Positions 27,854-57,137 of a stretch of 64,000 nt of DNA are shown here, in pieces. Made by a program: the position numbers and the translations under genes. The stretch comes from Haliotis rufescens (taxonomy: Eukaryota). The notes under the pieces were generated by a model. It was not told the DNA's origin. It ran no database searches and saw only the letters and a list, made by a program, of their open reading frames with translations. Where the stretch lies: assembly GCF_023055435.1 (NCBI RefSeq), contig NW_025963802.1, positions 17,546,001 through 17,610,000 on the forward strand, read 5' to 3'. The first letter of the stretch is position 1; every line of letters starts with the position of its first letter.

Positions 27854-27998
27854 ATGATTCCAAAACAATGGCTTCCAGGGGCATGTTTTCTGATTGGCTG
27901 TTTTGGGTTGGTGATGCCACAGCCCGTTGTCGGAATACAGTCGGCTAAAAATGACTTCGCTTTCCAGCTTCAACTCGACCGCCAGTTTGCGATAACAG
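27854..27998 (+). CDS. Peroxidase-like B exon 1 (signal peptide MIPKQWLPGACFLIGCFGLVMPQ...)
   Basis: Acceptor ttttacag at 27792, ATG 27854, donor G|gtatg. QLQLDRQFA parallels gene [10 protein letters not shown]. Confidence 0.8.
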
Positions 27999-30900
27999 GT
28001 ATGTTTTCTTGCTTAAACATACCTCAGTATTTCTCGCAAGTCGAATGAATTTGGAAAAAAACGTTTAAAGCAGATTTGTGTATGAGTATGAGAAGGTCTT
28101 GAGAGACGATCCAAAATAATACCCTCGTGAGACGATCCAAAATAATACCCCTGTGAAACGAAGGTAAAGGCGGTACACGCATGCTGTAGTGCTCATGAAG
28201 GTAGTTCACAGTCATACGATCGGTGCGACCATGTCTAATACATTTCATAGAAATATTCCCAGTGGGTTAAACCCGTGAAGATCTGGGAGATCTTCAGCAA
28301 CCCATGCTTGTCGTAAAAGGCGACTGTGCTTGTCGTAAAAGGCGACAGACGGGATCGCTGGTCAGGCTCGCTGACTTCGTTGATGCTTGTCATTGATCCC
28401 AATTGCGTGGATCGATGCTCATGATATCAATCGCTAGATTGTCTGGTCCAAGTTCGATTATGTACAGACCGCCGTCATATAGCTAGAATATTGCTGAGTG
28501 CGGCTTAAAACAACAAACCAACCAACCAACCAACCCAGTGGGTTAAATAGATCTCAAAAAGATTCCCAGGGTGTATCCTCCACATGTTTATGTTCCCTAA
28601 CTTTTTTGTTCAGTATGTAAAGAATATTTCACTCGTTCTCGTAAGATCCACTTACCATGTTTCTGACCGAGAAAACGCGAAGTGACATACTATAGAAACT
28701 ACACGTGTTTCGTAAGGTGAGGTGTAATGGCGTTTAACGTCGTGCTCTGGTGATAGAGCGTCCTCCCGGAGAGCGGAAGGTTCCGGGTTCAATGCCAAGC
28801 CGCGTCATACCAAAAGACGTTAAAAGATGGTACTTGTTGGTACCCTGCCTGGCTCTCTGTATGTAGGGGCTAAAACAAGGAGTCGTCGGCACGGAGTCAG
28901 TATATTGTGTCTGAGTGGGGAATTCATGTTAAAATGCAGCATGGTATCTCAGTGGACTGGCACTATAAAATCGGCATTAATTCGGAATAGTACAAACAGC
29001 CACACACACACACACAGCCACACACACACACATGTGCATGCACGTCGTTTTATAAATCTTAACGCGTGGATAAAGCGCATTTCACCTCATTGTATCCAAT
29101 GAATCTGCTTAAATTTGATTGACATTCAAGAACCCAATACATTGCAATGTTGTATTGAGATTGATCGTCCTTGGAGAATACTTCTGTACATTTGATTGAT
29201 AGTCAAGAACCCAATACATTGCAATGATGTATTGAGATTAGTCGTCCTTGGAGAATACTTCTGTACATTTGATTGATAGTCAAGAACCCAATACATTGCA
29301 ATGATGTATTGAGATTAGTCGTCCTTGGAGAATACTTCTGTACATTTGATTGATAGTCAAGAACCCAATACATTGCAATGATGTATTGAGATTAGTCGTC
29401 CTTGGAGAATACTTCTGTACATTTGATTGCTAGTCAAGAACCCAATACATTGCAATGATGTATTGAGATTGATCGTAATGCAGGAATCTTCTGTACAATT
29501 GATTGATAGTCAAGAACCCAATACATTGCAATGATGTATTGAGATTGATCGTAATGCAGGAATCTTCTGTACATTTGATTGATAGTCAAGAACCAATACA
29601 CCACATTTTGTATTACGATTGGTCGTTTCTGTTGTAGATGTAGATTCTTCAAGGCCGTCTGCTCGAGCCTCGCACACCGCATTTTCAGGTAGCGGCGCTA
29701 TAGCTCGTGCACTTGGCGACCAGTTTTTGAACCGCATAACAGCAGCTAGGAACGCAGCACCCGGGTGAGTCTAGGCCAAGTCACTACATTTTGATGGACA
29801 AGTCTCTATAACATACAGCTATTTGAATACATCGATGATTGATACGTCGCCTGGAGACGTCCAAACGATTGAGTAAAATCGTGTGTTTTATCTCAAAGTG
29901 ACGCATATTCTATTGGTGTCATAATCTTATAAGAAATTCTCCAAATGACTTTAAGATATATGTGCCCAACGTCCTACAGTATGTTCATTGTAGAAATCCT
30001 TGAAGTCGTAGTGACCCAATGTGGATTCCAGGTCAGAAAAGGAGCCGGCTGGTGGGGCTTACAAAGAACTTGGTTCAAGATTAACACAAAAATGTACAAA
30101 TAGAAGAAGTTAAGTTTATAGTAACTAGGAAATTTAAAAAGTTGGCAGGTATTTAATCGTGTATTTAAAATTGTGTTCCCAAATGTGTTGTTGCTGTGTG
30201 ACTAATAGTACTCTCTCATACAGGAAACGGAAGCCGACAATGACAAGATATCTGATTACGAGGGCTGGTCAAAACGATCTAAGCCTGACTTACTATGGGT
30301 CATAACAAAGTGAACAAAGTGAACAAGTCAATGTAGTTCACCGATTGAGTAGTTCATTGCACTGTTTTTGGTCTGTTGTGGCCGTATGTATATTAGTGAC
30401 AGCCAGTTGAACGTGATAGGGCTTAAAATGGACACAGAAAAGAACGAATACCGCTTTTGACTTGAGAAAAGTACTCCGCATGTCACAAGTGTAGGGGGAT
30501 AAGTGCCCCAGCTATTCCACTGTTAAACGTTGGGCAGCTCTGCTTAAGGCTGGGAGAACAAGCCTTGATGGTGACCCTAGGTCTGGACGTCCCTCAATCA
30601 AGATTCAATCAAGGAGATAGAAACAATTATACTGTCAGATAGACGTATTACCATTGCTGAACTTGAGGAAGACGCAGGTCTAGGCCATGGATCCAGTGAA
30701 ACGATTATTCATGAACATTTACAGAATAATGAATAAGACATCTGCTCGTTGGGTGCCAAAGTTTCTTAATTCTGATCTTAAGAAACAAAGAACTGACATT
30801 GCCAGAGAAATTTTAAAGCTAATTGAAGAGGATTTCGTCAAGTTCAAAAAGAGATTAGTAACGGGTGATGAAACATGGGTCTACCACTATGATCTCGAGT

Positions 30901-33900
30901 CAAAACGTCAATCCATGGAATGGTACCATTCCACTTCTCCGGCACCAAAGAAATTCAAGTCTTCAAGATCAGTGAAGAAAGTTATGGCCACTTATTCTGG
31001 CATGCAAAGTGTGTGATCCGTGTTGATTACTGGTGTGGTCGGATAGCCTAGTGGTTAAAGCGTTCGCTCGTCACGCCGAAGACCCGGGTTCGATTCCCGA
31101 CATGGGTACAATGTGTGAAGCGCATTACTGGTGTCCCCCGCCGTGATATTGTTGGAATATTGCTAAAAGCGGCGTAAAACCATACACACTCACTCACTTG
31201 TTGATTACTTTGAAAGTCAAAAAGGATTTCCACCTGTTTCCTAAACTGAAAGAACGCCTTCGTGGATACCACTATGACGACAACGATGACCTCAAAGCTG
31301 CCGTGAATGGGTTTTTCAGTGTGGCTTCAGAAAACTTCTTCCTGACTGGAATTGAATAGCATAACGATCGATATGAGAAGTGTATTGAAAAGCAGGGAAA
31401 GTATGTTGAAAAAATAAATAAAAACACTTTCAAAATTGTCGGTTTTGTTTGTTAGGTTTAGAACTTTTTGACCAGCGCTCGTACTACGATATACCCTTAA
31501 CCCTTTTTTATTATTTATGTTTTAGTTTGAAATGTGCATTTTTCAATCAGACAGTCACGGTTATATTAACTTGTTTCATATGCTTAAAATAGAACGGAAC
31601 GTTTCAGAATCTGTCAATTGAATTACCTCAACCAATTGGTGTTAACATACCTTACTCATATGCAGTTTCATTTTGTGCCTTGTATACTTTAAAGATCCCT
31701 TTCATCGTTAGGTTTGATGTAGACGAACAGTTTTCATGATAATTGAAACCCTCACCAAAAGGGGGCGGTCGGGTAGCCTAGTGGTTAACGCGTTCGCTCG
31801 TCACGCCGAAGACCCGGGTTCGATTCCCGACATGGGTACAATGTGTGAAGCCCATTTCTGGTGTCCCCCGCCGTGATATTGCTAGAATAGTGCTAAAAGC
31901 GGAGTAAAACCGTACTCACTCACTCACTCTCACCGAACGGAACAACTATAATAGACCTGGCTATTGAAGACGACAGTGTATACCTTTATATATTTCAATG
32001 TTTCCAGTTAATCCATTTAATTCCAACAATATTAATATATTAGCCCATTTCATTTTCCTATTTCCGCCAAGACCCCGGCCTGGTGCGACCCTTCAGGAAT
32101 TCGAGGACACCATGAAGCAGGCGATGATGGCAATTCCAAAGGTTGGGGTGTGTTCAGCCTTCATGGGCGTCTGTGACAACTCAAGCATCTACCGCACAGC
32201 CGACGGCAGCTGCAACAACCTCAACAACCCAACATGGGGAATGTCCAATACACCACAGAGACGCTACTTGCTGCCCAAGTATAATGACGGTTAGTAGTGG
32301 TTCTTGAAGTCCGGTGATTGAAGGGTAATTGGTGGTACTATTGTCATTACTGAATATCTATGATCCACTCAAGCAGTTGTCCCCTTTTGCGTTAACTGTT
32401 ACGCCCAAATGAATCTGTTTCGGCATATACTTGAGACTGATTATTCCCTGGCGTTGAAGCTTTACAATTACGTACACCATAGACAACACGAAACTAAAAC
32501 AGTAAACTAGTGATTGATAGCATGAGCGTGTTATATTTGTCGATAAGGCATGGCGACACACAAGTCCGTGAGCCACTATATCACTGCTTAGAGCATGGGC
32601 CACATAGAAGAATGGCTCTTTGCATGAGACGATCTTCGAGATATTTTATGACACGGGTCACACATTTTAAGCACCTAGTCAACCGGTCTGTTTCTAGGAC
32701 AAGCTACTGATCATATGTTCTTAAACGGTAGTCCCACAAGAACAGGAGTGATCTATCAAGCTGGACATCAAGTACTGCTTGGTACCCATATGGCTGTAAT
32801 GCTATCATTTCGGTAGTCTCGACACCAGAAAGGAACGTCCTTTGTATCCATTGGCACAGGTCGTTTGAGACGCCGCTCTTCGCTGTGAAGAGTTGCCTCC
32901 CTTTGGCGTGCCAGAAACCTATGATCGTAGGTTTAAAGACCAGGTTGGTTCAGATTGTATTTCGAGGTTTGTCATGTTCGTGCTCGTGGGCCTCCAGAGA
33001 GGTAAATATTCGTCATTTCGGGCTTTCCTCTCACATTACGCAGTGATACAACCAACTCACGCACTTACCCACTCACCTTTACATTGCTGTTATGTAGATA
33101 AACGCGACGTTAAACCGCTCACTAAGATATAATAGAATGCTGTACATGTGTATATAAGTATTCATCTTTCCTCTGTGTGTATGATGGTCCAGTGGTCTAA
33201 GGCTACGTGGATTTGCGCCCCTTGTTGTGCCAGGAGCCCATGATCATGGGTTCGAGTCCCAGATTCACCCTGATGATTATTCATGTTTTGGCAGCACTCT
33301 ACCACGCATCATCTTCCCGATGCAAGAGAGTTAACTGACTATAAAAGTCCAGTTTCCACCCTTGCCGAATTAGGCTGGTATTATGGAGTCTCAATATGGC
33401 TGGACTAACGAGTCTGTGCATTGTCCAATCAAAATCGCGCAACGAAATCTGCATCCGTTTCGTAAACTGTCGTGCAGATTTCGGTCGATTGCAGGATTTG
33501 CGCATGCAAAGCATGTGCACCGCCAACTCCTTGTCAACAGATATTTTCCCAAACTTTTCATGTTTTTAATAAAGGTGCTCACGTGATTTGCTGCACTTCG
33601 CGATGTAAGACCCGATTTATCACAATATGGATCTTGATTATCGATCAGATCGTCTTGACTTGGCGCCGCCATTTTGTTTGAAACAAATGCAAGTGATACG
33701 AGAGGTGGAAACTGATTGGTCCATGGAAGAGGTTTAGAAGGGTCACAACTCGTAATCACCACTGGTGGAGCTGCGATCGAGCCCAGGAATTCCAGTCTAG
33801 TTCGGCAAGGGTGGAAACTGGACATTTAAAGTCAGTTAACTCTCTTGCCTCGGATACTGTTCAAAGTATAGTTAGACTCAACTCACTCACCTCATTGAAT

Positions 33901-36900
33901 GTTAAGGAATACGCAGTCCACGTACTCGTGGTGTGTTCAGCGATCCTCTGCCAAGTGCCCGACTGGTCAGCACCACCGTCCACGCCCCCGACGACAAGGC
34001 CCCTCAGATGAAATTCATCTCCCAAATACTGACGCAGTGGGGGCTGTTCCTGGCCCTCGACATCACAAGCACGCCAATAAGGACAGGTGCGTCCGACGTC
34101 CAACTGCGTGCGTGTGTGTGTGTGTGTCTATGTGTGTAAGTGTGTTTGCGTGAGTGTGTCTGTCTGTGAGTGTGTGTTTGTTTGTGTGCGTGTGTGTGTG
34201 ATTGTATCTGTGTGTGTGTTTGTTTGTATGCGTGTGTGAGTGTCTGTGTATGTGTTTGTTTGTATGCGTGTGATTGTGCCTGTGTGTGTGTTTGTCTGTA
34301 TGCGTGTGTGTGAGTGTCTGTGAGCGTGTATGTGTGTGCACGATTGTGCGTTAGTGCGTTTGGGTGTGCTTGTATGTGTCGGACTAGTACCCCAAATTAT
34401 ACGGTTTATGGCGAACTTGGACGATCTTCTGTAATAAATGTACCTAAGATCAGAATGGTCTCTTTTGGGGCAAAACTCCGACCCGGAAAATCATCAAAAT
34501 TATCTTTACTGATTTACAAGCTTTGATATAATGATAACCTATTTCAAAGACGCAAACATAAATGGATAACGTTTGTAAAACAAATCTTCGACGATCTTGG
34601 TCAAAGTTTCATTTGGCAATCACAAAGTTTTCATAGTCCAAATCATCTTAAAAATATGAATAAGAACAAATTAAATGATATCAATTTACAATGCTGGAAA
34701 GTCACCCGACATATATATTACAAAGGAGCCATGCATACCATGGTATGAATCCCTGAATTTCAAAAGTTATTTAAAAATGAAAGTAAGTATTTGGTAAGAC
34801 TTATTACAATTTAGAACCTCCAATCACAATCTCCCAATTGAAACTGGAAAATGGTAAAAGAAAATANNNNNNNNNNNNNNNNNNNNNNNNNNNNNNNNNN
34901 NNNNNNNNNNNNNNNNNNNNNNNNNNNNNNNNNNNNNNNNNNNNNNNNNNNNNNNNNNNNNNNNNNNNNNNNNNNNNNNNNNNNNNNNNNNNNNNNNNNN
35001 NNNNNNNNNNNNNNNNNNNNNNNNNNNNNNNNNNCGTTAATGTGTGTGATATATGTGTGTGTGTCTGTATATGATTGTGTGCGTGAATGTGTTTATGTGT
35101 GTCTGTAATTGTCTGGGANNNNNNNNNNNNNNNNNNNNNNNNNNNNNNNNNNNNNNNNNNNNNNNNNNNNNNNNNNNNNNNNNNNNNNNNNNNNNNNNNN
35201 NNNNNNNNNNNNNNNNNNNNNNNNNNNNNNNNNNNNNNNNNNNNNNNNNNNNNNNNNNNNNNNNNNNNNNNNNNNNNNNNNNNNNNNNNNNNNNNNNNNG
35301 TGTTTGTTCATCATATTCCACAGTTGTGTGTAACAATCGCGTTCAATTTGCTTATAATTTTGTTTTGTGTAATTTGTTGCATCTTTTGCTTCTTTTAAAT
35401 ATTCAACAGTTTTGTTTTGGGTTATTTATTTTTATTTTTATTTTTGTCAAACACAGTGGTAAATATAACAGCTCGTGTCTTTTATACAGGACTTGACGGT
35501 CGACCTCTGACGTGTTGTCCTGAAGACCTTCCGCCTCTGCTGAAGGGGATTCTTGACACGGCTCTTAGGTACTACATGTGTTTCTAAGATGCTTCGCTAA
35601 GAGATCAAAGGCGCCTGCTGTACTTTATCCTGCGTACACTTTCTGAGTTAAGTCATAATATATTCACGTCATGGCGCTGTTCAGATTACCTCCCCCGTGA
35701 TCTAGCGTATCCTTGGTAACATCGTTCTTTCATTACTATCAAGCAAGATGTCGCATTCACAACAAGATTCGACGAAAGAGCTTCTTTAAACTTGTCGAAT
35801 ATATGAGTATTATTACCTGGGAAGACATATGGCAAGATAATTATACTTACCATAATTCAATCCACTGGTCCGTGGTCATAAAATTGTCCGTTGCAGGCGT
35901 TAATGCCTTACGAATTATGGTTGTCTCTCAGGACAAAGGAATGAGCAGTCCATGAAAAGTACCATAACCACATGTCGACATCTTCCGAAGTCAAGGGAAT
36001 TGACAAGTACAAGTCCTATACAAGACTATACAAGTCCAGTTTTCATCCTTGCCAAAATAGGCTGGAATAATGGAGTTATGTTTTGGCTGGATTAACGAGT
36101 CATTGCATAATCCAATCAAAATCGCGTAACGAAATCGACATCTGGTTCTTAAACTGCAGTGAGGATTTCGGTCGATTGCAGGATTTGCAAGTCATGTGTA
36201 CCGCCAACATTCCTTCAACAGAAAATTTCCAAATCTTTTCACGTTTTTAATAAAGGTGCTCACGTGATTTGATGCACTCCGCAAAGTCAATATAGATCTC
36301 GATTATCGAACAAATTATCTTCACTAGCGCCGCCATTTTGTTTAAAGTTAATGCAAGGTATATGAGAGGTGGAAGCTGATTGGTCAACAGGACCAGTGAT
36401 GCAGGTCTCAGACGTTTACCACTTCGGTGAAATCCATGAGCACGGGTATGGTGCTGACCTAGAAACATAATCGGGGCGAGCCGGGATTCGAACCCACAAT
36501 TATAGGTGTCTGGCGTGCCCTAGGAACGCAACTCTGCACATCGAATCGCGGCACCTTAGACAACTGGGCCACCCGTGCCCCCATTAAAAAAGAACATCCA
36601 TTTTGCAAGCATGAATATTATCATTGATATTTTTCAAGTGGCGATGACAGTAATAGGGTCTACGTATGCCACTCATAATAGCATTTCAATTGTATGTGTG
36701 TCAGCTTAATGTGCTCGGCATCCTTGAATAATGTGGCAATGTGACGCCGCCCGTAAACATTTATCGCTGTTGTGAAACCCTAAAATACGCGTATGATGCA
36801 GATCATCTGTACGAAACTCATCTTCCCGAGGCAAGAGAGTTAACTGACTTCAAAAGTCAAGTTTCCACCCTTGCCGAACTAGGCTGGAATTACTGGACTC

Positions 36901-39900
36901 GATCGTAGCGCCACCAGTGGCTATTACCAGTTATGTCCCTTCTAAGCTTCTACTATGGACCAATCAGATTCCACCTCTCGTATCACTTGTGTTTGCTTGA
37001 CACAAAATGGTGGCGCCCAAACAGGACGATCTAATCGATAATCAAGATCGATAATCAAGATCTTACACCACGAAATGCATCAAATCACGTGAGGACCTTG
37101 ATTAAAAACATGAAAAGATTTGGGAAATATCTGCTGACAACATGATTGGGGTGCAACAGAAATATTTCTTTTTAGGATACACACCTACAATATTTGTGTT
37201 CACAGAGACGGGTGTTTCCCTATCGATATCCCCCAAGGGGACAGGTTCTTCCGTAGGAGATGCATGCACTTTCCCCGGTCTATACAGGTAGAGAATCCGC
37301 AGTGCACTGGAGGTATGTCCCCAACACGTCTCCGTAGGTTCTGGATATCGGTGAGTGAGTGAGGTGATTTAAACGCCGCTTTGAACAGCATCCAGTCCTA
37401 TCACGGCGTATCAACTTGATTTGGGAGAAACGCCCGATGTGCTGCAGGTCTTAGACGTTTACCCCTTTGGCGAAACCCCCGAGTTTGAACGCAGGATCAT
37501 TGGTTCCTCGTACGAACAAGGGATGCAACTCTGCACAGCGGCACCTCAGACGACTGGGCCACCCTAAAACCATGTCCTTGTATCCATGGTAGTTTAATAT
37601 ATAAACAAAATCAAAATCTTGGGCCAATAAGTTAAAGTCTCATGAGTCGTTCCTAGAAAGCATCATGTGGAGGTTTGCAGTATGTCTGTTTGTTTCTTGT
37701 TAAACGAACACTCAGCATATTCCAGCTATAAAACGGAGGCCTGTTTATAATAGTGTCTGGGACAGACAACACCAGGGTACGATGACACGCAATCAATCAG
37801 GTCATTGTGTTTGACCACATCTATTTTAATCGCCTTGCACGACACACTTAGGTTACAGGGAACCAATTCTCACCAGGATTGACCAGAAGCGATCGAGCTG
37901 ACTACTTATCCAGGGCGCCGCGATTCGCTTACAGAGTCGCGTCCCTTGGGCACTCAGGAAACCTATGATTGTGGGTTCGAATCCCGGTTCACCCCGATTA
38001 TGTTACCAGTTTTGTCAGCACCACAACCATGCTGGTGGGTTTCACCGAAGTGGTAAACGTCTAAGACCTGCATCACTTCGGGCTTTCCTCCCACATTAAG
38101 CTGACACGCCGTGATATAACTGGAATACTGTTACCACCCTACCAAAACCCGTTAAGCATACCTCACTCACTCACAGACATCACATAACGACATTAACTCG
38201 GGTAGTTTGCAACTTGATACTACGGCTTGTAGGGGATTAGGGTTGACTTTTTATAGAAACCAAATATGTGCATGACAGTAAGTTTTGTCACTTTCAATAT
38301 TTGAAATTTAAAAGGAATCATTAAATAACCAGCAGGCTTTCCTCATCATCTTAATATACATTCACGGGTCTATAAATACTCACCAAATACCATTCAGAGT
38401 AATGTGCCTTTGCCAAATCCTCAGTTCATCTAAACAATTCACCTCTCTGGTGTCTCTATGTGCTGTGTCTTGCAGTGCCAGCGGAGCAGCTCAACCAACG
38501 GACGGCGTACATCGACGCCTCCCCTCTGTATGGGACGACTGCTGAAGAGGCCGCAGGCCTCAGGGCCATGGTTGATGGTGAATATGTATATGTACCACCA
38601 TTGGGCAGGACTTGTTCGCGAGCACATGGCATAATGATTATTTGATAGTCGCGCTGATGATATAGTCGGAAACGTACAATGGATTTTGCTTTCAGCGGGG
38701 AGTTCTTATGACTAATGGTGTGCCGCTTTTCTTTACGACGTCGTCTTTTCATAAAACAAATAAGCCCTCTCGGTTGGATAAGATGTTTTGCTCCATCATT
38801 ATTGTTTGGGGCATAATAAGATTAAGTGACAAACAATGTTTGAACATTTCTTCAGACTGACTTTCTTCTTCCCTTTAGTGTAAATTTCAAATGTTCGAAT
38901 AGATATTAAGTCTGTATTGTCAACGGTAAATATTTGATTCATGCTTTATGATGATATTTTGTCAGGTTTATTGAAAACGTCGATGGGGGTGTCAAGTATA
39001 CAGACCATATTCATGAGAGAGCATAACAGAACAGCCCGGTCTCTCAAGAAGATCAACCCACATTGGAATGACGAAAGACTCTTTCAGGAGACCAGGAGAA
39101 TTATTGGCGCCATCGTCCAGAAGATTACTTATAACCATTTCCTTCCGCTCGTTCTGAACAAGTTCGCCCTCGCCAAGTATAAACTGGGGTCCCCCAGATA
39201 CGGATACTATAACGTTTATAGTAGATCCACTGACGCAAGCATCGTTAACGCGTTTTCGACAGCCGCATTTCGGTTCGGACACTCCATTCCTAGATCTGTG
39301 GTCAGCAGAGTGCGGCCGGACTTCTCCACAAGGAGGTTTGAGCGTTTGTTCCGGGTGTTCCTCAACACCGGGTCAAGTGATGGGGAAGCTGTTGGTGACT
39401 ATGTAAGGGGTGAGTTGAACGACAGAGCGAATCCGGTTGACCGCTTCATGTCGACGGATCTGACAGACAGGCTGTTTCTCGTCAATAACAACAGCCTCGA
39501 TCTGGCCGCTTTCAACATCCAGCGGGGTCGGGACCATGGTTTGCCGGGGTATTCGGCGTTCAGGCAGCTGTGTGGTCTACCCGGGGTGTACAACTTCCGA
39601 CCTTCCCATGGAGGACTCGTGGACCATGATCCCCACACTGCAAGACTTCTGGAATCTGTCTACAAGTTAGTCTCTGCACATGTTTCGCATTACACAGTGT
39701 GTTTCACAGCACTTTTCCTAAAACATCAATTTAAAAAAAATTCATTTCTTTTGCATACCGAGTAACCTCGTTAGTCTGGAAACCACTCCTGTCTGGCCAT
39801 CATTATGAAAGTGCTACCTAATCAAAGGGACATTACTCTAAACCATGATTCGTTAATCCAGACCTCGTTAGTCTGGAAACCACTCCTGTTGGGCCATCAT

Positions 39901-42900
39901 TATAAAAGTGCTACCTTATCAAAGGGACATTACTCTAAACCATGATTCTTTAATCCGGAAACGAGATATTTCACCGTTCGGATTAACGGGGATTGAGTGT
40001 ATATGTTCAATGGCATCACTCCGAAATTTGCAAACACGAAACAAATTAACGTTTGAGCTTGTCATTATGTTTACTTTGGAGAAGTAGTTTCCATGCCATG
40101 ATATACCATGTTGAATCCCAGCCGTTAAATGAATACTGAAAGATCAGCGAGGATTCCGGAACTCAGTGTCCCATGCTTGTCGTAAGACGGCTAATGAGGA
40201 TTGGGTGGGTACAATGAACGAACAGGAGGGGTGTGTCACCGTGCACCAGTTGCTTGGCTCGTCCCTACTGCTCACAGCCGACATCATTATTTTGTGGCTT
40301 TCATATCGCTGAATGCGGCGTAGAATAACATGCACTTATTCAGTCTATATTTGTTTGTTTCTTTCTTTCTTTCTTTGGTTGGTTGGTGGGTTGATTGTTC
40401 ATTGAGGCCGTACTCAGCAATATTCTAGTCATATGACGGCGATCTGTATATTATCGAGTCTGGACCAGGCTGTCCATTTGACATCAAGAGCATCGATCTA
40501 CGCAAATGGGATGCGATGACATGCATCAACTATGTCAGCGAGGTCTGACCACCCGATCCCGTAAGCATGGGTTGCTGAGAACCCATTCTAACCCGGTTCT
40601 TCGCGAAAGCCTTCGTCTATAACTCATTAAACTTTTTACAGGGATCCTGAGGATATTGACCTGTTTACTGGAGGGGTCTCGGAGAAACCAATCGAAAAGA
40701 GTTTAGTTGGACCCCTGTTTACCTGTCTACTGGGACGTCAGTTTTCAGCCTTGAAGAGAGGGGATCGGTTCTGGTATGAGCTCAGTGACCCTGTCACGCG
40801 GTTTACACCGGGTGAGTGAAAAGTATTTCACAGAGCGTGAGTTGGGGTTAACGCCGCTTTTAACATTATTCCAGTTATATCACGGCGTGTCAGCTTAATG
40901 TGGGAGAAAAGCCCGACGTGATCCAGGTCTGAGACGTTTACCACTTCGGTGAAACCCACGAGCACGGGTATGGTGCTGACAAACCTAGAAACATAATCGA
41001 GATTCGAACCCAGAAGTACCTGATGGCATGGATAACACGACAATCGAACATTTCTCAGCAGGCATGTCTACTGCTGGTCAGTGCTTTTGCAAAAGGTGAT
41101 CTTAGCGTTAAGGTGATCTTTAATACAGACTTACGACAGTCGGAGCGCTCAGATCGCTTTGCCGGACGGGGCACAGTGAACCGTTCTACACATGGTCTTG
41201 GCGCTAAGGCGACTGTAACTCACATTCTTCAAATACACTTACGACAGTCGAACGTCTCAGATCGCTTTGTAGAACGGAGGCAAGTGAACCGTTCTACACA
41301 TGGTCTTAGTGCTAAGGCGATCGTAACTTAATTTCTTCAAAATACACTTACGACAGTCATGGGGCTCAGATCGCTTTGGAGAACGGTGCCCAGTGAACCG
41401 TTCTACACATGGTCTTAGTGCTAAGGCGATCGTAACTTAATTTCTTCAAAATACACTTACGACAGTCGTGGGGCTCAGATCGCTTTGGAGAACGGTGCCC
41501 AGTGAACCGTTCTACACATGGTCTTAGTGCTAAGGCGATCGTAACTTAATTTCTTCAAAATACACTTACGACAGTCGTGGGGCTCAGATCGCTTTGGAGA
41601 ACGGGGACCAGTGAACCGTTCTACACATGGTCTTAGGGCTAAGGCGATCGTAACTTAATTTCTTCAAAATACACTTACGACAGTCGTGGGGCTCAGATCG
41701 CTTTGGAGAACGGTGCCCAGTGAACCGTTCTACACATGGTCTTAGTGCTAAGGCGATCGTAACTTAATTTCTTCAAAATACACTTACGACAGTCGTGGGG
41801 CTCAGATCGCTTTGGAGAACGGTGCCCAGTGAACCGTTCTACACATGGTCTTAGTGCTAAGGCGATCGTAACTTAATTTCTTCAAAATACACTTACGACA
41901 GTCGTGGGGCTCAGATCGCTTTGGAGAACGGTGCCCAGTGAACCGTTCTACACATGGTCTTAGTGCTAAGGCGATCGTAACTTAATTTCTTCAAAATACA
42001 CTTACGACAGTCGTGGGGCTCAGATCGCTTTGGAGAACGGTGCCCAGTGAACCGTTCTACACATGGTCTTAGTGCTAAGGCGATCGTAACTTAATTTCTT
42101 CAAAATACACTTACGACAGTCGTGGGGCTCAGATCGCTTTGGAGAACGGTGCCCAGTGAACCGTTCTACACATGGTCTTAGTGCTAAGGCGATCGTAACT
42201 TAATTTCTTCAAAATACACTTACGACAGTCGTGGGGCTCAGATCGCTTTGGAGAACGGTGCCCAGTGAACCGTTCTACACATGGTCTTAGTGCTAAGGCG
42301 ATCGTAACTTAATTTCTTCAAAATACACTTACGACAGTCGTGGGGCTCAGATCGCTTTGGAGAACGGTGCCCAGTGAACCGTTCTACACATGGTCTTAGT
42401 GCTAAGGCGATCGTAACTTAATTTCTTCAAAATACACTTACGACAGTCGTGGGGCTCAGATTGCTTTGGAGAACGGGGACTAGGACGCTAAGGTACCCTG
42501 TATGTATACACTTCAGTTGTAGGTGAGTTGATACATTTACGTGAATGTCACAGCTGGCACTTTTTCATCTCTATTATTGTTCCTTTCTCTAGATGCTACT
42601 TAACTGTAAACTCTACGAGGTGGAAGTCGGTTTGGTAACGGTAAACCTCCAATCAAAGCACTAATTAATAGCTTTTTATGCAATATAATGATCGAACTGA
42701 GTCTTCGAATCCGGAACATGACATCATGGCTGATAACAAAGCGACGTATTGTAAAACCTGCAAACAATGACAGTCGCTGTTGTTATTCATTATAAGTTAA
42801 AGTCGTATACATGTCCACGATTCTCATTAAACTGAACTATTCTTCCAGATCAGCTGTTGGAGATTCGAAAGACCACCCTGTCCCGCATCGTGTGTGACAA

Positions 42901-43913
42901 CACCAATACCTTCCACGTCCAGAGAGATGCCTTCAGACTCAAGTCCGCATCGTACGTACGCATTTACGGGTTCATTCGGCTGATTTCGATACCCTAATAA
43001 CAACTTCGGGCAGCGATGCAGTAGGGATATTGCATGAATTCTCTTTCGTCTATGGGGCCGCAATTCGCTGTGCAGAGTTGCGTCCTTTAAGTGCGCCAGG
43101 AACCTATTATCATGAGACAGAATCCCGGTTCGCCCAGAATATATTTCTAGGTTTGTCAGCGCCATGCCCATGCTCGTGGGTTTCACCAAAGTGACCGTCT
43201 AAAACATTAACTCCGTCTGGCTTCCCCCCACAAGAATACAGCTAACAAACAGGCATTTCTTTGCAACGCAGCGCAAAACCAAATCAATCAGTCACGTGAC
43301 AGGACATTCATCCAATAACATGTACATGTACTTTCAGTCATCTTGAGTGTGGTTACAACATACTACTAACTTAGATAAAATGAAGTTTTGAAAAAGTTGT
43401 CAACATGTGAAAAATAAAATTAATTTAAGTTAATTTAACAAATTCTGTATACAGAGAGCTTAAACATTTTAACTTGCATTTTCTTGGCATCAAATTTCAT
43501 CACACTCACAAATACTTGCAATAAGACAAATGCATACTCTGGAAATGTGTGTTGAATATTTTTACAATGAAACAAGTCACATGGTACAGACATATATAGA
43601 GAATCCGTTATATGTTCCGCTACTCCAGAAACAACCGATTCTCTTGCTACAGACCTATATTGCAAACATGCGCATGTTAAATGTATTTCATGTATTTCTT
43701 GTCTCCAGGAATCACCGTGTCCCGTGTTACAGCTTGCCTCGTCTGGACCTGACCAAGTGGAGAGAACAACAGCCTCAGTGGTCAAGCTGGTCCGCCGCGT
43801 CAGACTGTTCAACCAGAGTTACCTTCCAGTTCCGGAGGAGGACGTGCATACCGGAAGAAGGTGGATGTCGCGGGCCGCGGGAAATGAGGCGCATGTGCCC
43901 GTCACGGGGGTAG
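27854..43913 (+). CDS. Secreted peroxidase-like protein B (peroxidase-cyclooxygenase superfamily; distal catalytic residues lost; C-terminal TSP1-like repeat), 11 coding exons, ~711 aa
   Basis: Exons 27854-27998, 29638-29764, 32072-32289, 33907-34086, 35490-35568, 37206-37312, 38476-38577, 38966-39665, 40642-40811, 42849-42951, 43709-43913 join in frame (2136 nt including TAG), all GT-AG. Motifs: YRTADGSCNN, LPSARLVS, EQLNQRTAYIDAS, FMREHN, AFRFGHS, LAAFNIQRGRDHG, DIDLFTGG, GDRFWYE, LSRIVCDN. Confidence 0.92.
28272..28533 (+). mobile_element. Short retroposon family A
   Basis: 14-bp TSD CCCAGTGGGTTAAA; (AACC)n tail. Confidence 0.9.
28745..29090 (+). mobile_element. SINE family D
   Basis: Same core and (CA)n-containing 3' part. 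Confidence 0.8.
29127..29600. repeat. 76/77-bp tandem repeat (~6 units)
   Basis: CAAGAACC starts at 29127, 29204, 29281, 29358, 29435, 29511 and 29587. Confidence 0.95.
29638..29764 (+). CDS. Peroxidase-like B exon 2
   Basis: tgtag|...GG|gtgagt; DVDSSRPSARASHTAFSGSGAIARALG is homologous to gene A exon 2. Confidence 0.85.
30259..31481 (+). mobile_element. Decayed mariner (Tc1/mariner) transposon
   Basis: TA-flanked TIRs CGAGGGCTGGTCAAAA / TTTTGACCAGCGCTCG; ARWVPKFL and TGDETWVYHYD motifs; frameshifts, internal deletion and a SINE insertion. Confidence 0.92.
31033..31198 (+). mobile_element. Short tRNA-derived SINE family C inserted in mariner
   Basis: A box TAGCCTAGTGG, B box GGTTCGATTCCC, TSD TGTTGATTACT. 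Confidence 0.9.
31761..31928 (+). mobile_element. SINE family C
   Basis: Nearly identical to the 31033 copy; TSD CTCACCRAA. Confidence 0.9.
32072..32289 (+). CDS. Peroxidase-like B exon 3
   Basis: YRTADGSCNNLNNPTWGMSNTPQRRYLLPKYNDG; donor gttagt. Confidence 0.92.
33310..33853. mobile_element. Same MITE family, intron 3 of gene B
   Basis: Long TIR GCAAGAGAGTTAACTGACT...CTTGCCGAA. Further pieces at 36030-36390 and 36819-37150. Confidence 0.82.
33907..34086 (+). CDS. Peroxidase-like B exon 4 (distal helix, QWGLFLALD)
   Basis: PRTRG..DPLPSARLVS...TQWGLFLALDITSTP; aag| acceptor, gtgcgt donor. Confidence 0.9.
34105..34380. repeat. Imperfect (GT)n microsatellite
   Basis: GT-rich run following exon 4. 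Confidence 0.9.
34385..34866 (+). mobile_element. LINE 3' fragment
   Basis: TPNYTVYGELGR, and FRTSNHNLPIETGKW near 34810. Confidence 0.7.
34867..35299. other. Two assembly gaps (34867-35034 and 35119-35299)
   Basis: Runs of N. Confidence 0.99.
35490..35568 (+). CDS. Peroxidase-like B exon 5
   Basis: ttttatacag|GLDGRPLTCCPEDLPP...|gtact; phases 1/2 fit both neighbours. Confidence 0.8.
37206..37312 (+). CDS. Peroxidase-like B exon 6
   Basis: CFPIDIPQGDRFFRRRCMHFPRS, the typical CFPI.IP..D.F....CM.F.RS motif. Confidence 0.9.
37911..38172 (+). mobile_element. SINE family B
   Basis: B box GGTTCGAATCCC, body and (CACT)n tail. Further copies near 2615-2817, 12320-12460, 17410-17630, 32790-33070, 36395-36582, 37350-37563, 40836-41020, 43055-43190, 49975-50105, 53601-53832, 58110-58330, 60000-60135 and 63330-63430. 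Confidence 0.85.
38476..38577 (+). CDS. Peroxidase-like B exon 7 (Ca2+-binding loop)
   Basis: EQLNQRTAYIDASPLYG. Confidence 0.92.
38966..39665 (+). CDS. Peroxidase-like B exon 8 (proximal His/Asn; lacks GDxRxNE segment)
   Basis: GLLKTS runs directly into MGVSSIQTIFMREHN; AFRFGHS; NIQRGRDHG; donor AA|gttagt. Confidence 0.93.
39757..40002. mobile_element. Pogo/Tigger-like MITE with an internal ~97-bp tandem duplication
   Basis: ACCTCGTTAGTCTGGAAACC repeated at 39765 and 39862; right end GGATTAACGGGGATTGAGTGTA. Confidence 0.5.
40378..40605 (-). mobile_element. Short retroposon family A (intronic)
   Basis: Similarity to other copies. Confidence 0.78.
40642..40811 (+). CDS. Peroxidase-like B exon 9
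   Basis: DIDLFTGGVSE...VGPLFTCLLGRQFSALKRGDRFWYE; donor gtgagt. Confidence 0.92.
41075..42480. repeat. 109-bp tandem array of a MITE-derived monomer (~13 units)
   Basis: About 10 near-identical units from 41391, preceded by 2-3 diverged ones; homologous to the MITE at 57329. Confidence 0.95.
42849..42951 (+). CDS. Peroxidase-like B exon 10
   Basis: QLLEIRKTTLSRIVCDN...QRDAF. Confidence 0.92.
43709..43913 (+). CDS. Peroxidase-like B exon 11 (end of peroxidase domain plus TSP1-like tail)
   Basis: NHRVPCYSLPRLDLTKW, then WSSWS..SDCS...QFRRRTC...GCRG...RMC, stop TAG. Confidence 0.88.
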
Positions 43914-44546: not shown

Positions 44547-47500
44547 TCACACTCACGAATCACCGTGACACTACAATCAGAATCCCTTCAACACCACACT
44601 CACGAATCACCGTGACACTTTAATTGGAATCTCTTTAACACCACACTCACGAATCACCGTGACACTATAATCAGAATCCCTTTAACACCACACTCACGAA
44701 TCACCGTGACACTTTAATTGGAATCTCTTTAACACCACACTCACGAATCACCGTGACACGACAATCAGAAGCCCTTTAACACCACACCCACGAATCACCG
44801 TGACACGACAATCAGAATCCCTTCAACACCACACTCACGAATCACCGTGACGCTACAATCAGAATCCCTTTAACACCGCACTCACGAATCACCGTGACAC
44901 TACAACCAGAATCCCTTTAACACCACACTCACGAATCACCGTGACACTTTAATCAGAATCCCTTTAACACCACACTCAAGAATCACCGTGACACTACAAT
45001 CAGAATCGCTTCAACACCACCCACGAATCACCGTGACACGACAATCAGAATCCCTTCAACACCACACTCACGAATCACCGTGACGCTACAATCAGAATCA
45101 GTTCAACACCACTTACGAATCACCGTGACACGACAATCAGAAGCCCTTTAACACCACACCCACGAATCACCGTGACACGACAATCAGAATCCCTTCAACA
45201 CCACACTCACGAATCACCGTGACGCTACAATCAGAATCCCTTTAACACCGCACTCACGAATCACCGTGACACTACAACCAGAATCCCTTTAACACCACAC
45301 TCACGAATCACCGTGACACTTTAATCAGAATCCCTTTAACACCACACTCAAGAATCACCGTGACACTACAATCAGAATCGCTTCAACACCACACCCACGA
45401 ATCACCGTGACACGACAATCAGAATCCCTTCAACACCAAACTCACGAATCACCGTGACACTTCAATCAGAATCAGTTCAACACCACTTACGAATCACCGT
45501 GACACGACAATCAGAATCCCTTTAACACCACACCCACGAATCACCGTGACGCTACAATCAGAATCCCTTTAACACCACACTCGCGAATCACCTTGACACT
45601 ACAATCAGAATCCCTTTAACACCACACTCACGAATCACCGTGACACTACATTCAGAATCCCTTCAACACCACACTCACGAATCACCGTGACACTACAATC
45701 AGAATCCCTTCAACACCACACTCACGAATCACCGTGACACTACAATCAGAATCCTTTAACACCACACTCACGAATCACCGTGACACGACAATCAGAATCC
45801 CTTTAACACCACACTCACGAATCACCGTGATACTGCAATCAGAATCCCTTCAACACCACACTCACGAATCACCGTGACACTACAATCAGAATCCCTTTTA
45901 ACACCACACTCACGAATCACCGTGACACTTTAATCACAATCCCTTTAGCACCACACTCACGAATCGCCAGACACGACAATCAGAATCCTTTAACACCACA
46001 CTCACGATCCACCATGACACTACAATCAGAATCCCTTTAACACCACACTCACGAATCACCGTGACACTTTAATCACAATCCCTTTAACACCACACTCACG
46101 AATCACCGTGACACTTTAATCACAATCCCTTAAACACCACACTCACGAATCACCGTAACACTACAATCAGAATCATTTTAACACCACACTCACGAATCAC
46201 CGTGACACTACAATCAGAATCCCTTTAACACCAAACTCACGAATCACCGTGACACTACAATCAGAATCCCTTTAACACCACACTCACGAATCACCGTGAC
46301 ACTACATTCAGAATCCCTTCAACACCACACTCACGAATCACCATGACACTACGATCAGAATCCCTTCAACACCACACTCACGAATCACCGTGACACTACA
46401 ATCAGAATCCTTTAACACCACTCACGAATCACCGTGACACGACTATCAGAATCCTTTAACACCACATTCACGATCCACCTTGACACGACAATCAGAATCC
46501 TTTACCACCTCTCACGAATCTCCGTGACACGACAATCAGAATCCCTTTAACAACACACTCACGAATCACCGTGACACTACTATCAGAATCCCTTCAACAC
46601 CACACTCACGAATCACCGTGACACTACAATCAGAATCCCTTTAACACCACACTCACGAATCACCATGACACTACATTCAGAATTTCTTCAACACCACACT
46701 CACGAATCACCGTGACACTACAATCAGAATCCCTTTAACACCACACTCACGAATCACCTTGACACTACAATCAGAATCCCTTCAACACCACTCACGAATC
46801 ACCGTGACGTTACAATCAGAATCCCTTTAACACCACACTCACGAATCACCGTGACACGACAATCGGAATCCCTTTAATACCACACTCACGAATCACCGTG
46901 ACACTACAATCAGAATCCCTTTAACACCACTCACGAATCACCGTGACACTACAATCAGAATCCCTTTAACACCACTTACGAATCACCGTGACACTTTAAT
47001 CAGAATCATTTAACACCACTCACGAATATCCGTGACACGACAATCAGAATCCCTTCAACACCACACTCACGAATCACCGTGACACTACAATCAGAATCCC
47101 TTTAACACCACACTCACGAATTACCGTGACACGACAATCAGAATCCCTTTAACACCACACTAACGAATCACCGTGACACTTTAATCAGAATCCCTTAAAC
47201 ACCACACTCACGAATCACCGTGACACTACAATCAGAATCCCTTTAACACCACACTCACGAATCACCGTGACACTACAATCAGAATCCCTTTAACACCACA
47301 CTCACGAATCACCGTGACACTACAATCAGAATCCCTTTAACACCACACTCACGAATCACCGTGACACTACATTTAGAATCCCTTCAACACCACACTCACG
47401 AATCACCGTGACACTACAATCAGAATCCCTTTAACACCACACTCACGAATCACCGTGACACTACATTTAGAATCCCTTCAACACCACACTCACGAATCAC

Positions 47501-48242
47501 CGTGACACTACAATCAGAATCCCTTTAACACCACACTCACGAATCACCGTGACACTACATTCATAATCCCTTTAACACCACTCACGAATCACCGTGACAC
47601 TACAATCAGAATCCCTTTAACACCACACTCACGAATCACCGTGACACTACATTCAGAATCCCTTCAACACCACACTCACGAATCTCCGTGACACTACAAT
47701 AGGAATCCCTTCAACGCCACTCACGAATCACCGTGACGCTACAATCAGAATCCCTTTAACACCACACTCACGAATCACCTTGACACTTTAATCAGAATAC
47801 CTTTAACACCACAATCACGAATCACCGTGACACTACAATCGGAATCCCTTTAATACCACACTCACGAATCACCGTGACACTACAATCAGAATCCCTTCAA
47901 CACCACTCATGAATCATCGTGACACTACAATCAGAATCCCTTTAACACCACTCACGAATCACCGTGACACTACATCAGAATCCCTTTAACACCACACTCA
48001 CGAATCACCGTGACACTACAATCAGAATCCCTTCAACACCACTCACGAATCACCGTGACACTACAATCAGAATCCCTTTAACACCACTCACGAATCACCG
48101 TGACGCTACAATCAGAATCCCTTTCACGCCACACTCACGAATCACCGTGACACTACAATCAGAATCGCTTTAACACCACACTCACGAATCACCGTGACAC
48201 TACAATCAGAATCCCTTTAACACCACACTCACGAACCACCGT
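44547..48242. repeat. 47-bp minisatellite (~79 units)
   Basis: CTCACGAATCACCGTGACACTACAATCAGAATCCCTTTAACACCACA with 45/46-bp variants. Confidence 0.97.
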
Positions 48243-56979: not shown

Positions 56980-57137
56980 NNNNNNNNNNNNNNNNNNNNN
57001 NNNNNNNNNNNNNNNNNNNNNNNNNNNNNNNNNNNNNNNNNNNNNNNNNNNNNNNNNNNNNNNNNNNNNNNNNNNNNNNNNNNNNNNNNNNNNNNNNNNN
57101 NNNNNNNNNNNNNNNNNNNNNNNNNNNNNNNNNNNNN
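56980..57137. other. Assembly gap
   Basis: Run of N. Confidence 0.99.

What the first reader, a model, noticed from the sequence alone, without database searches (positions are those of the whole stretch)
34035..34061. QWGQFxDHD converted to QWGLFLALD by three second-position changes
Seen: codons CTG (34044), GCC (34053) and CTC (34056) are each one base from CAG (Gln), GAC (Asp) and CAC (His). Three changes within five codons all hit functional positions and all make them hydrophobic, while neighbouring W, G, F and the Ca2+-binding D are untouched. Inference: directed remodelling to an apolar distal pocket.
Basis: partly seen in the sequence, partly recalled or inferred. Interest (0 to 1): 0.75.

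Follow-up and report, generated by a model that had tools for sequence, protein, structure and literature searches.

The report
Conserved dead peroxidase paralog in abalone
This is exon 4 of an intact, transcribed abalone gene for a secreted peroxidase-shaped protein that has lost every residue needed for peroxidase chemistry, a lineage-specific "pseudo-enzyme" of a kind already known in this protein family.

Summary
Window 34035-34061 reads CAG TGG GGG CTG TTC CTG GCC CTC GAC = QWGLFLALD. Spliced RNA contigs of two coded species labels carry the same bases.

It is exon 4 of an 11-exon gene (27854-43913, + strand). The product is the 711-aa RefSeq model 'peroxidase-like [Haliotis rufescens]'.

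- This is the only one of 74 motif exons in the genome without the distal His.
- The loop carrying the catalytic Arg and the haem-linking Glu is also gone. A genomic deletion fused a small exon to exon 8.
- The Ca2+ site, the proximal His/Asn/Arg and 106 of 125 family-conserved positions are kept.
- The predicted fold is confident and MPO/LPO-like.

The three changes were not one event. Orthologs in H. cracherodii (LFLTLD), H. asinina (QYVVFD) and H. rubra (AFLVFD, QFLVFD) already lack Asp and His. Loss of Asp/His is therefore old and Gln->Leu is later.

The gene now evolves at the protein rate of its catalytic paralogs.

Verdict: a conserved non-catalytic paralog, comparable to human PXDNL. 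'Directed' remodelling is untested. First-stage notes on this same window had already flagged the pseudo-peroxidase and the loop deletion.

The parts
27854..27998 (+). Coding exon 1: start codon and a hydrophobic N-terminus that looks like a signal peptide (MIPKQWLPGACFLIGCFGLVMPQPVVG...)
   Evidence: maps residues 1-48 of P0151 here. The signal-peptide reading is my inference from the sequence; no predictor was run.
29638..29764 (+). Coding exon 2
   Evidence: residues 49-91 of P0151; GT/AG sites read from the flanks printed there.
32072..32291 (+). Coding exon 3: start of the peroxidase domain (YRTADGSCNN ... KYNDG)
33907..34086 (+). Coding exon 4: distal-helix exon carrying QWGLFLALD at 34035-34061. 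Gln->Leu at 34044, Asp->Ala at 34053, His->Leu at 34056; the Ca2+-ligand Asp is kept at 34059.
   Evidence: Spliced RNA contigs cover 33906-34082/87 in runs X11, X12 and X19.
35490..35568 (+). Coding exon 5 (LDGRPLTCCPEDLPPLLKGILDTAL)
   Evidence: The 81 unlisted letters of X11 record 1 between its exon 4 and exon 6 pieces fit this exon.
37206..37312 (+). Coding exon 6 (CFPIDIP ... RSIQVENPQCTG)
   Evidence: (contig pieces 37204-37310).
38476..38577 (+). Coding exon 7: Ca2+-site segment (NQRTAYIDASPLYG)
   Evidence: (pieces 38474-38576). T295, D299 and S301 are invariant in alignment A1.
38966..39665 (+). Coding exon 8, a fusion exon. Its acceptor and first five codons (LLKTS) are homologous to a separate small exon of the neighbouring paralog. 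They join directly to MGVSSIQTIFMREHNR, so the loop with the distal Arg and the ester Glu is missing. The exon also carries the proximal His (AAFRFGHS) and its Asn (FNIQRGRDHG).
   Evidence: RNA contig pieces 38965-39666; LPO alignment.
40642..40811 (+). Coding exon 9 (DIDLFTGGVSEK ... KRGDRFWYE)
42849..42951 (+). Coding exon 10
43709..43913 (+). Coding exon 11: C-terminal Cys-rich WSSWS segment that looks like a thrombospondin type 1 repeat, and the stop codon TAG
   Evidence: Pfam TSP_1 was not reported at E <= 0.01, so the domain name is a resemblance only.

Best explanation
The finding sits in exon 4 of an intact, spliced, transcribed 11-exon gene of the red abalone genome. The gene encodes a 711-aa secreted protein with the animal haem-peroxidase fold that can no longer act as a peroxidase.

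All five distal-site residues that the family uses are gone. These are the residues that cleave H2O2 (His, Arg), organise the site and bind halide (Gln), and tie the haem covalently (Asp, Glu). Three were lost by point substitutions in exon 4. Two were lost through a genomic deletion that fused a small upstream exon to exon 8.

The gene arose by an inverted duplication of the canonical gene next to it, before the Haliotis species compared here diverged. Asp and His were lost on the stem of that lineage. Gln->Leu and the loop deletion followed on the branch leading to H. rufescens and H. cracherodii. Since then the protein has been kept by purifying selection on the fold, the Ca2+ site and the proximal-haem side.

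Inferred, not shown: it works as a non-catalytic extracellular binding or scaffold protein, a pseudo-enzyme, possibly in partnership with active paralogs. The apolar residues at the former catalytic positions simply pack a cavity that no longer has to handle peroxide.
For: Sequence and reads
- The codons are as described.
- Spliced contigs from runs of three coded species labels join exons 4, 6, 7 and 8 at GT/AG sites. In X11 and X12 one contig spans all four; in X19 exon 4 lies on a separate contig.
- An open frame runs from ATG to TAG over 11 exons and matches protein P0151 residue for residue.

Loss of the catalytic set
- In the LPO alignment Q105/D108/H109 align to L210/A213/L214. LPO residues 208-261, which hold Arg255 and Glu258, have only 9 residues opposite them.
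- The neighbour has a separate exon (GLLKMSRFTLLPRDRSTLEVCTDQCFKAG) followed by DERVNEQMGL. The window joins LLKTS directly to MGV.
- PXDN carrying only the Gln and Asp substitutions is inactive (passages of PMC8533639).

Age
- The clade of 5 proteins from 4 species has SH-aLRT 100 and is sister to the canonical neighbour at 99.
- All 5 lack Asp and His.

Constraint
- 106 of 125 family-conserved columns are kept.
- Between the H. rufescens and H. asinina orthologs, family-conserved columns are 106 same / 9 different. Other columns are 369 same / 224 different (Fisher p 1e-11).
- H. rufescens versus H. cracherodii protein divergence is 3.95%, inside the 2.92-7.47% range of 11 canonical pair comparisons.
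- 5 of 5 listed exon differences among runs are synonymous.
- Against the neighbour, pN is 0.24 and pS 0.68, the latter saturated.

Fold
- AlphaFold2 mean pLDDT is 90.7 and pTM 0.88. The motif lies in helix 204-216.
- The best structural matches are MPO and LPO, with target-normalised TM 0.80-0.84.
Against: - No activity, haem content, tissue or partner was measured, so the non-catalytic role is an inference from missing residues.
- The path between the H. rufescens and H. asinina orthologs on the tree (0.49 changes per column) is longer than in the other orthogroups I read off the same tree (about 0.15-0.30). Part of the lineage's history was therefore fast, which fits relaxed constraint or adaptation.
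- The strict retention of the proximal His, its Asn and two Arg is not needed by a pure scaffold. It leaves room for a haem-dependent role.
- The synonymous-only signal rests on 5 listed differences out of at least 20 in one run; the others were not shown.
- The RNA label of runs X11, X12 and X19 is the tool's guess. Only the intron-skipping contigs show that they hold transcripts.
Confidence: 0.8

Rival explanations
1. Haem is still bound non-covalently through the conserved proximal His. On this reading the apolar distal side (Leu/Ala/Leu here, Val/Phe in other species) is a selected feature that turns the protein into a binder or carrier of haem, of a diatomic gas or of a hydrophobic ligand.
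For: - H425, R422, N503 and R506 (LPO His351, Arg348, Asn437, Arg440 by the alignment) are invariant in all 5 clade members.
- The replacements at the former Asp and His sites are apolar in 5 of 5 proteins.
- The distal helix is predicted with high confidence.
Against: - The same proximal residues are invariant in the whole family, so they may be kept for packing alone.
- The former Asp site varies among Ala, Thr and Val. The former Gln site varies among Gln, Ala and Leu.
- Deletion of the Arg/Glu loop removes one wall of the pocket.
- No model coordinates were available to measure a cavity, and no selection test could be run.
Confidence: 0.13
2. A young or decaying pseudogene that is still transcribed; the three changes are ordinary neutral damage.
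For: - Overall divergence from the nearest canonical paralog is high: 53-81% identity per exon. Three differences in nine motif residues is no denser than the gene's average.
- The lineage has long internal branches.
Against: - There is no stop or frameshift in 11 exons.
- Splicing is correct.
- Intact orthologous models exist in 4 species, although all share the loss of Asp and His.
- The family-conserved core is kept.
- The protein rate equals that of the active paralogs.
Confidence: 0.04
3. Assembly or sequencing error at 34044-34058, or a still-active peroxidase that uses other residues.
For: - Only contigs were laid, not raw reads.
- Five paralogs on another contig do without the Asp (QWGQFMAHD) while keeping His, so single losses are tolerated in this family.
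Against: - Identical bases stand in RNA contigs of two coded species labels.
- The same kind of motif is present in RefSeq proteins of a second species.
- The His-Arg pair is described as present in all haem peroxidases of both superfamilies (passage of PMC3533774). Here both are absent.
Confidence: 0.03

Closest known systems
Human peroxidasin-like protein (PXDNL, hsPxd02)
   Same: A conserved, expressed paralog of an active animal haem peroxidase, substituted at exactly the Gln and Asp of the QWGQxxDHD motif and without peroxidase activity. It is thought to act through something other than catalysis (passages of PMC8533639, and of PMC3533774).
   Different: - By those passages PXDNL has Trp and Glu at these two sites; the passages name no loss of His, Arg or Glu.
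- Here His, Arg and Glu are gone as well, and the Arg/Glu loop is deleted.
- PXDNL is a multidomain peroxidasin. This protein shows only the peroxidase domain in Pfam plus a short TSP1-like tail.
- The two are independent losses in different branches of the family.
Head-to-head neighbouring paralog, 'peroxidasin-like [Haliotis rufescens]' (P0155; G000:C24 about 17.53-17.55 Mb, minus strand)
   Same: - It has the same exon layout.
- Identity is 54-56%.
- It is sister to the pseudo-peroxidase clade on the tree.
- It shares the unusual SIQTIF in place of the usual MHT segment.
   Different: It keeps QWGQFLDHD and GDERVNE, and it has a separate small exon for the loop. Its C-terminal WSxWS segment reads in another frame.
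Peroxidase-homology domain of mammalian dual oxidases (DUOX1)
   Same: A peroxidase fold used without peroxidase chemistry. DUOX1 chains are structural matches of the model, with query-normalised TM 0.58-0.60.
   Different: - That mammalian DUOX domains lack haem and key residues is recalled from memory; it was not checked here.
- DUOX is a membrane fusion protein. This one is a free secreted protein.
- Sequence similarity is low: E 8.7e-21 over about 130 residues.
Peroxinectins and mollusc shell-matrix 'peroxidase-like' proteins
   Same: - They are secreted invertebrate members of the same family with proposed adhesive or matrix roles.
- An abundant 'peroxidase-like' protein is reported in Haliotis laevigata shell (passages of PMC6003135).
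- An RGD triplet stands in KRGDRFWYE.
   Different: - That peroxinectins keep the catalytic residues is recalled, not tested.
- RGD or KGD at that place is common in the active paralogs too.
- Whether the shell protein is the ortholog could not be checked, because its sequence is in supplements that were closed.

Membership tests
Animal haem peroxidase family (Pfam PF03098; peroxidase-cyclooxygenase superfamily), membership by descent | Significant match to the family profile | tested here: met
   518.9 bits against a cut-off of 25. The match comes in two stretches because the middle loop is missing.
Animal haem peroxidase family, membership by descent | MPO/LPO-type helical fold | tested here: met
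   (pLDDT 90.7, pTM 0.88). (proMPO 5mfa_A E 1.3e-41, target-normalised TM 0.82; LPO 0.80-0.82).
Active haem peroxidase (enzyme) | Distal His-Arg pair for heterolytic H2O2 cleavage | tested here: not met
   His -> Leu214. The Arg lies in the deleted loop. The role of the pair is from a passage of PMC3533774.
Active haem peroxidase (enzyme) | Distal Gln of the W/F-G-Q-F motif | tested here: not met
   Gln -> Leu210.
Active haem peroxidase (enzyme) | Asp and Glu that form ester links to the haem | tested here: not met
   Asp -> Ala213. The Glu is deleted.
Active haem peroxidase (enzyme) | Proximal His with its Asn hydrogen-bond partner | tested here: met
   H425 and N503 align to LPO His351 and Asn437 and are invariant in alignments A1 and A2.
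Active haem peroxidase (enzyme) | Distal Ca2+ site (the Asp after the His, plus the T-x-x-x-D-x-S segment) | tested here: met
   D215, T295, D299 and S301 are invariant in A1. The role of the Asp is from a passage of PMC3533774. The other ligands are recalled.
Active haem peroxidase (enzyme) | Measurable peroxidase activity and bound haem | not testable with these tools
   Needs recombinant protein.
Pseudo-peroxidase (non-catalytic conserved paralog, as PXDNL) | Catalytic residues replaced while the gene stays intact, expressed and conserved between species | tested here: met
Pseudo-peroxidase (as PXDNL) | Peroxidasin domain set (LRR, Ig, vWC) | tested here: not met
   One search finds only An_peroxidase. 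This is an analogue of PXDNL, not its ortholog.
Unprocessed pseudogene | Stops, frameshifts or broken splice sites; neutral rate | tested here: not met
   (open over 11 exons, GT/AG flanks). (spliced contigs). (constraint).

The most novel reading that the evidence does not exclude
An abalone-specific clade of secreted peroxidase-fold proteins may have kept the proximal haem ligand set while replacing the whole polar distal side by apolar residues. That would make an extracellular haem protein that binds a small ligand (a gas, haem itself or a lipid) instead of activating peroxide. It would be a new functional class within the peroxidase-cyclooxygenase superfamily.
Probability: 0.12. Interest if true: 0.7.

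Novelty: new member of a known kind. Interest (0 to 1): 0.36.

Why it matters
Abalone genomes carry a very large, tandemly amplified set of haem peroxidase genes: 106 profile matches in this genome. This gene is the one copy among 74 motif exons that has given up the catalytic His and yet has been kept in at least four species.

- It is a clean natural case of how an enzyme family sheds chemistry step by step: point substitutions first, then deletion of a whole catalytic loop by exon fusion.
- It marks a protein whose annotation ('peroxidase-like') should not be read as an enzyme in studies of shell formation, immunity or oxidative stress in abalone.
- It also offers a simple test of whether the conserved proximal side of the fold can hold haem without the covalent links.

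Tried and rejected
- Acceptor of exon 4. I first placed it at 33940/33941. The reading phase did not fit the donor at 32291. The acceptor at 33905/33906 does fit, and it is the one used by the RNA contigs.
- Substitution versus deletion. I first read the start of exon 8 as a string of substitutions in GDxRxNE. Alignment with more distant relatives and with the neighbour's extra exon showed a deletion with exon fusion instead.
- dN/dS against the neighbour. It is not informative because synonymous sites are saturated (pS 0.68).
- dN/dS against a congener.
- Pocket analysis. The prediction tool returns no coordinates, so no cavity analysis was possible.
- Literature. Three searches listed no paper on catalytically dead peroxidases of abalone. 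This covers the open-access library only. A link to shell matrix therefore stays open.
- Spliced model. Exons were searched apart. Full-length work used the public protein P0151 that a tool returned.
- Tree. It was built with the quick method (LG+G4, SH-aLRT only), and several long branches were flagged among outgroups.
Full report
**What is at the coordinates**

Window 34035-34061 reads CAG TGG GGG CTG TTC CTG GCC CTC GAC, which translates to QWGLFLALD. The window is G000:C24:17546001-17610000 of a 1.33-Gb genome. That genome holds 106 matches to the animal haem peroxidase profile PF03098 (81 of 484 first-look candidates were scored).

The motif lies in exon 4 (33907-34086) of a plus-strand gene with 11 coding exons, from the ATG at 27854 to the TAG at 43911-43913. 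The product is identical to P0151, a 711-aa protein named 'peroxidase-like [Haliotis rufescens]'. It sits on a contig of 43,813,872 bases, the length of C24. Exons were searched apart, and full-length work used this public protein.

**Is the sequence real**

One read-laying run was available, and it returned Logan contigs, not raw reads.

- Run X11 (organism A) has a 2393-letter contig lying on 33906-34082, 37204-37310, 38474-38576 and 38965-39666. Its 81 unlisted letters fit exon 5. This is a spliced transcript.
- Run X12 (organism B) shows the same joints and has 0 other letters in exon 4.
- X11 and DNA run X6 differ at 34046 G>T only, which is CTG->CTT, still Leu.
- Run X19 (organism C) has the same joints, except that its exon 4 piece is a separate contig. 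It has 3 other letters in exon 4 whose places were not shown.
- The five exon differences that were listed (34046, 37263, 38562, 39036, 39189) are all synonymous. At least 15 further differences of X19 were not listed.
- The 'RNA' label of these runs is the tool's guess. The intron-skipping contigs are what shows transcription.

**How unusual it is in this genome**

The exon 4 peptide finds 74 places in the genome, one of them itself. I read all 73 others: 29 loci and 44.

| Residue kept | Count out of 73 | Exceptions |
|---|---|---|
| Distal His | 73 | none |
| Ester Asp | 67 | 5 read QWGQFMAHD on contig C112, 1 reads NHD |
| Distal Gln | 69 | 4 have His |

This gene is therefore the only copy without the distal His.

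The nearest paralog lies head to head just upstream of the window. It reads CAA TGG GGA CAG TTC CTG GAT CAT GAC.

**The rest of the active site**

Against lactoperoxidase, Q105/D108/H109/D110 align with L210/A213/L214/D215, and His351 aligns with H425. LPO residues 208-261, which hold Arg255 and Glu258, face only nine residues of the query. The LPO residue roles are from my knowledge. The corresponding roles in MPO numbering are given in passages of PMC3533774.

The neighbour encodes GLLKMSRFTLLPRDRSTLEVCTDQCFKAG on a separate small exon, followed by DERVNEQMGLTSIQ on the large exon. In the window, the acceptor and the first five codons of exon 8 (GT TTA TTG AAA ACG TCG) align with the start of that small exon. 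They run straight into ATG GGG (MGV...). A genomic deletion therefore removed the rest of the small exon, the intron and the first codons of the large exon, in frame. The catalytic Arg and the ester Glu went with it.

The following are kept:
- the Ca2+ ligand Asp215 and the T295/D299/S301 segment;
- Arg422, His425, Asn503 and Arg506;
- the REHNR, NIQRGRDHG and GDRFWYE blocks.

**Substitution density**

Overall identity to the neighbour is only 53-81% per exon. Three changes in nine residues is therefore not dense by itself. The picture changes at conserved positions.

- Among 125 alignment columns that are at least 94% conserved in 53 canonical mollusc peroxidases, this protein deviates at 19.
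- Ten of the 19 are in the deleted loop. Four are in the distal helix (M206T, Q210L, D213A, H214L). Five are elsewhere (S306T, L328V, W518F, G573S, T578L).
- The canonical proteins deviate at a median of 1, with a range of 0-24. The high values belong to short or partial models.

**Orthologs and timing**

A search of 1.84 billion representatives with exon 8 gave one close hit, P0001 of Haliotis cracherodii (97% identity). A search with P0151 added proteins of H. asinina (P0152, 65%) and H. rubra (P0153 65%, P0154 59%), and the neighbour P0155 (54%). On a tree of 58 proteins these five form a clade with SH-aLRT 100, sister to P0155 at 99 (quick method).

| Protein | Species | Motif |
|---|---|---|
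| P0151 | H. rufescens | QWGLFLALD |
| P0001 | H. cracherodii | QWGLFLTLD |
| P0152 | H. asinina | QWGQYVVFD |
| P0153 | H. rubra | QWGAFLVFD |
| P0154 | H. rubra | QWGQFLVFD |

- In H. asinina and H. rubra the loop is shortened and reads AGQEPVNAL or similar, with Asp, Arg and Glu replaced. In H. rufescens and H. cracherodii the loop is gone.
- By parsimony on these states, His->Leu and loss of Asp happened on the stem of the clade. Leu->Phe followed in the H. asinina/H. rubra branch. Gln->Leu and the large deletion happened on the H. rufescens/H. cracherodii branch.
- The three changes of the finding are thus a stepwise series, not one event.

**Constraint**

- There are no stops or frameshifts.
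- Between the H. rufescens and H. asinina orthologs, family-conserved columns are 106 same / 9 different. Other columns are 369 same / 224 different (p 1e-11).
- Between H. rufescens and H. cracherodii the protein differs at 28 of 708 aligned residues (3.95%). Eleven comparisons of canonical paralog pairs give 2.92-7.47%.
- The single family-conserved column that differs between those two species is the former Asp site, A213T.
- Against the neighbour, pN is 0.24 and pS 0.68. Synonymous sites are saturated, so the ratio of about 0.16 is only indicative.

On the other side, the H. rufescens-H. asinina path in this clade (0.49) is longer than in the other orthogroups of the same tree (about 0.15-0.30). 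The lineage therefore went through a faster phase.

**Fold**

- AlphaFold2 with a 75-sequence alignment gives mean pLDDT 90.7 and pTM 0.88.
- The motif lies inside helix 204-216. Confidence is somewhat lower at the fusion point, with a block mean of 81 for residues 321-330.
- Foldseek ranks proMPO, MPO and LPO first, with target-normalised TM 0.80-0.84.
- Pfam reports only An_peroxidase.

**Reading**

The protein cannot carry out the His/Arg-assisted cleavage of H2O2 that defines the family (passage of PMC3533774). Replacing only the Gln and Asp in human peroxidasin already abolishes activity, and the natural paralog PXDNL carries such changes and is inactive (passages of PMC8533639).

I therefore read this gene as a conserved non-catalytic paralog. 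Its actual job is inferred: binding, scaffolding or regulation outside the cell.

The retained proximal haem ligands leave a minority reading open, in which haem is still held under an apolar distal side. A decaying pseudogene and an assembly error are unlikely on the evidence above.

**Comparison and novelty**

The kind of thing, a dead paralog in the animal haem peroxidase family, is known (PXDNL). That mammalian DUOX domains are a further example is recalled from memory.

This case is an independent, abalone-specific instance. It is more thoroughly stripped than PXDNL, since all five distal residues are gone, and it shows a clear order of events.

Three literature searches of the open-access library listed no paper describing it. 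An abundant 'peroxidase-like' shell protein of H. laevigata is reported (passages of PMC6003135). Its sequence is in closed supplements, so a link could not be tested.

First-stage notes on this same window had already flagged the pseudo-peroxidase and the loop deletion. My checks agree with them and refine the deletion to an exon fusion.

Noticed in passing
G000:C112 about 5.49-5.60 Mb (loci L089, L093-L096): Five tandem peroxidase paralogs read QWGQFMAHD. The haem-ester Asp is replaced by Ala while the distal His is kept. One further copy on C24 (L092) reads QWGQFINHD.
   Followed up: partly
G000:C24 6.89-7.16 Mb (loci L069-L087 and others): A long tandem array of peroxidase genes. In it, 18 motif exons read identically as QWGQFVDHDL.
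   Followed up: partly
neighbouring gene, G000:C24 about 17534470-17534680 (locus L061): In the canonical neighbour, the segment that corresponds to the C-terminal WSSWS/Cys-rich tail reads in a different frame (GGLPGHGVWPRCFVGHH...). It seems to have lost that tail by a frameshift.
   Followed up: no
window 44548-48242: A 47-base minisatellite of about 79 copies, 90% matches, with a strong strand bias in composition. It lies just downstream of the gene.
   Followed up: partly
window 38562: The assembly has A where all four laid runs have C (AGG vs CGG, both Arg). This is a private allele or an assembly choice.
   Followed up: yes
window 34089-34360 and the introns in general: A long imperfect (TG)n-rich microsatellite starts directly after the exon 4 donor. 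Introns 5 to 7 hold very high-copy repeats, with depths of 10^4-10^6 in all runs.
   Followed up: no
window 30687-31016: An open frame inside intron 2 resembles a mariner/Tc1-type transposase fragment (...ETWVYHYDLESKRQSMEWYH...). The name is my recollection; no search was run.
   Followed up: no
window 34867-35034, 35119-35299, 56980-57137: Three runs of N, two of them in intron 4. They were left untouched.
   Followed up: no
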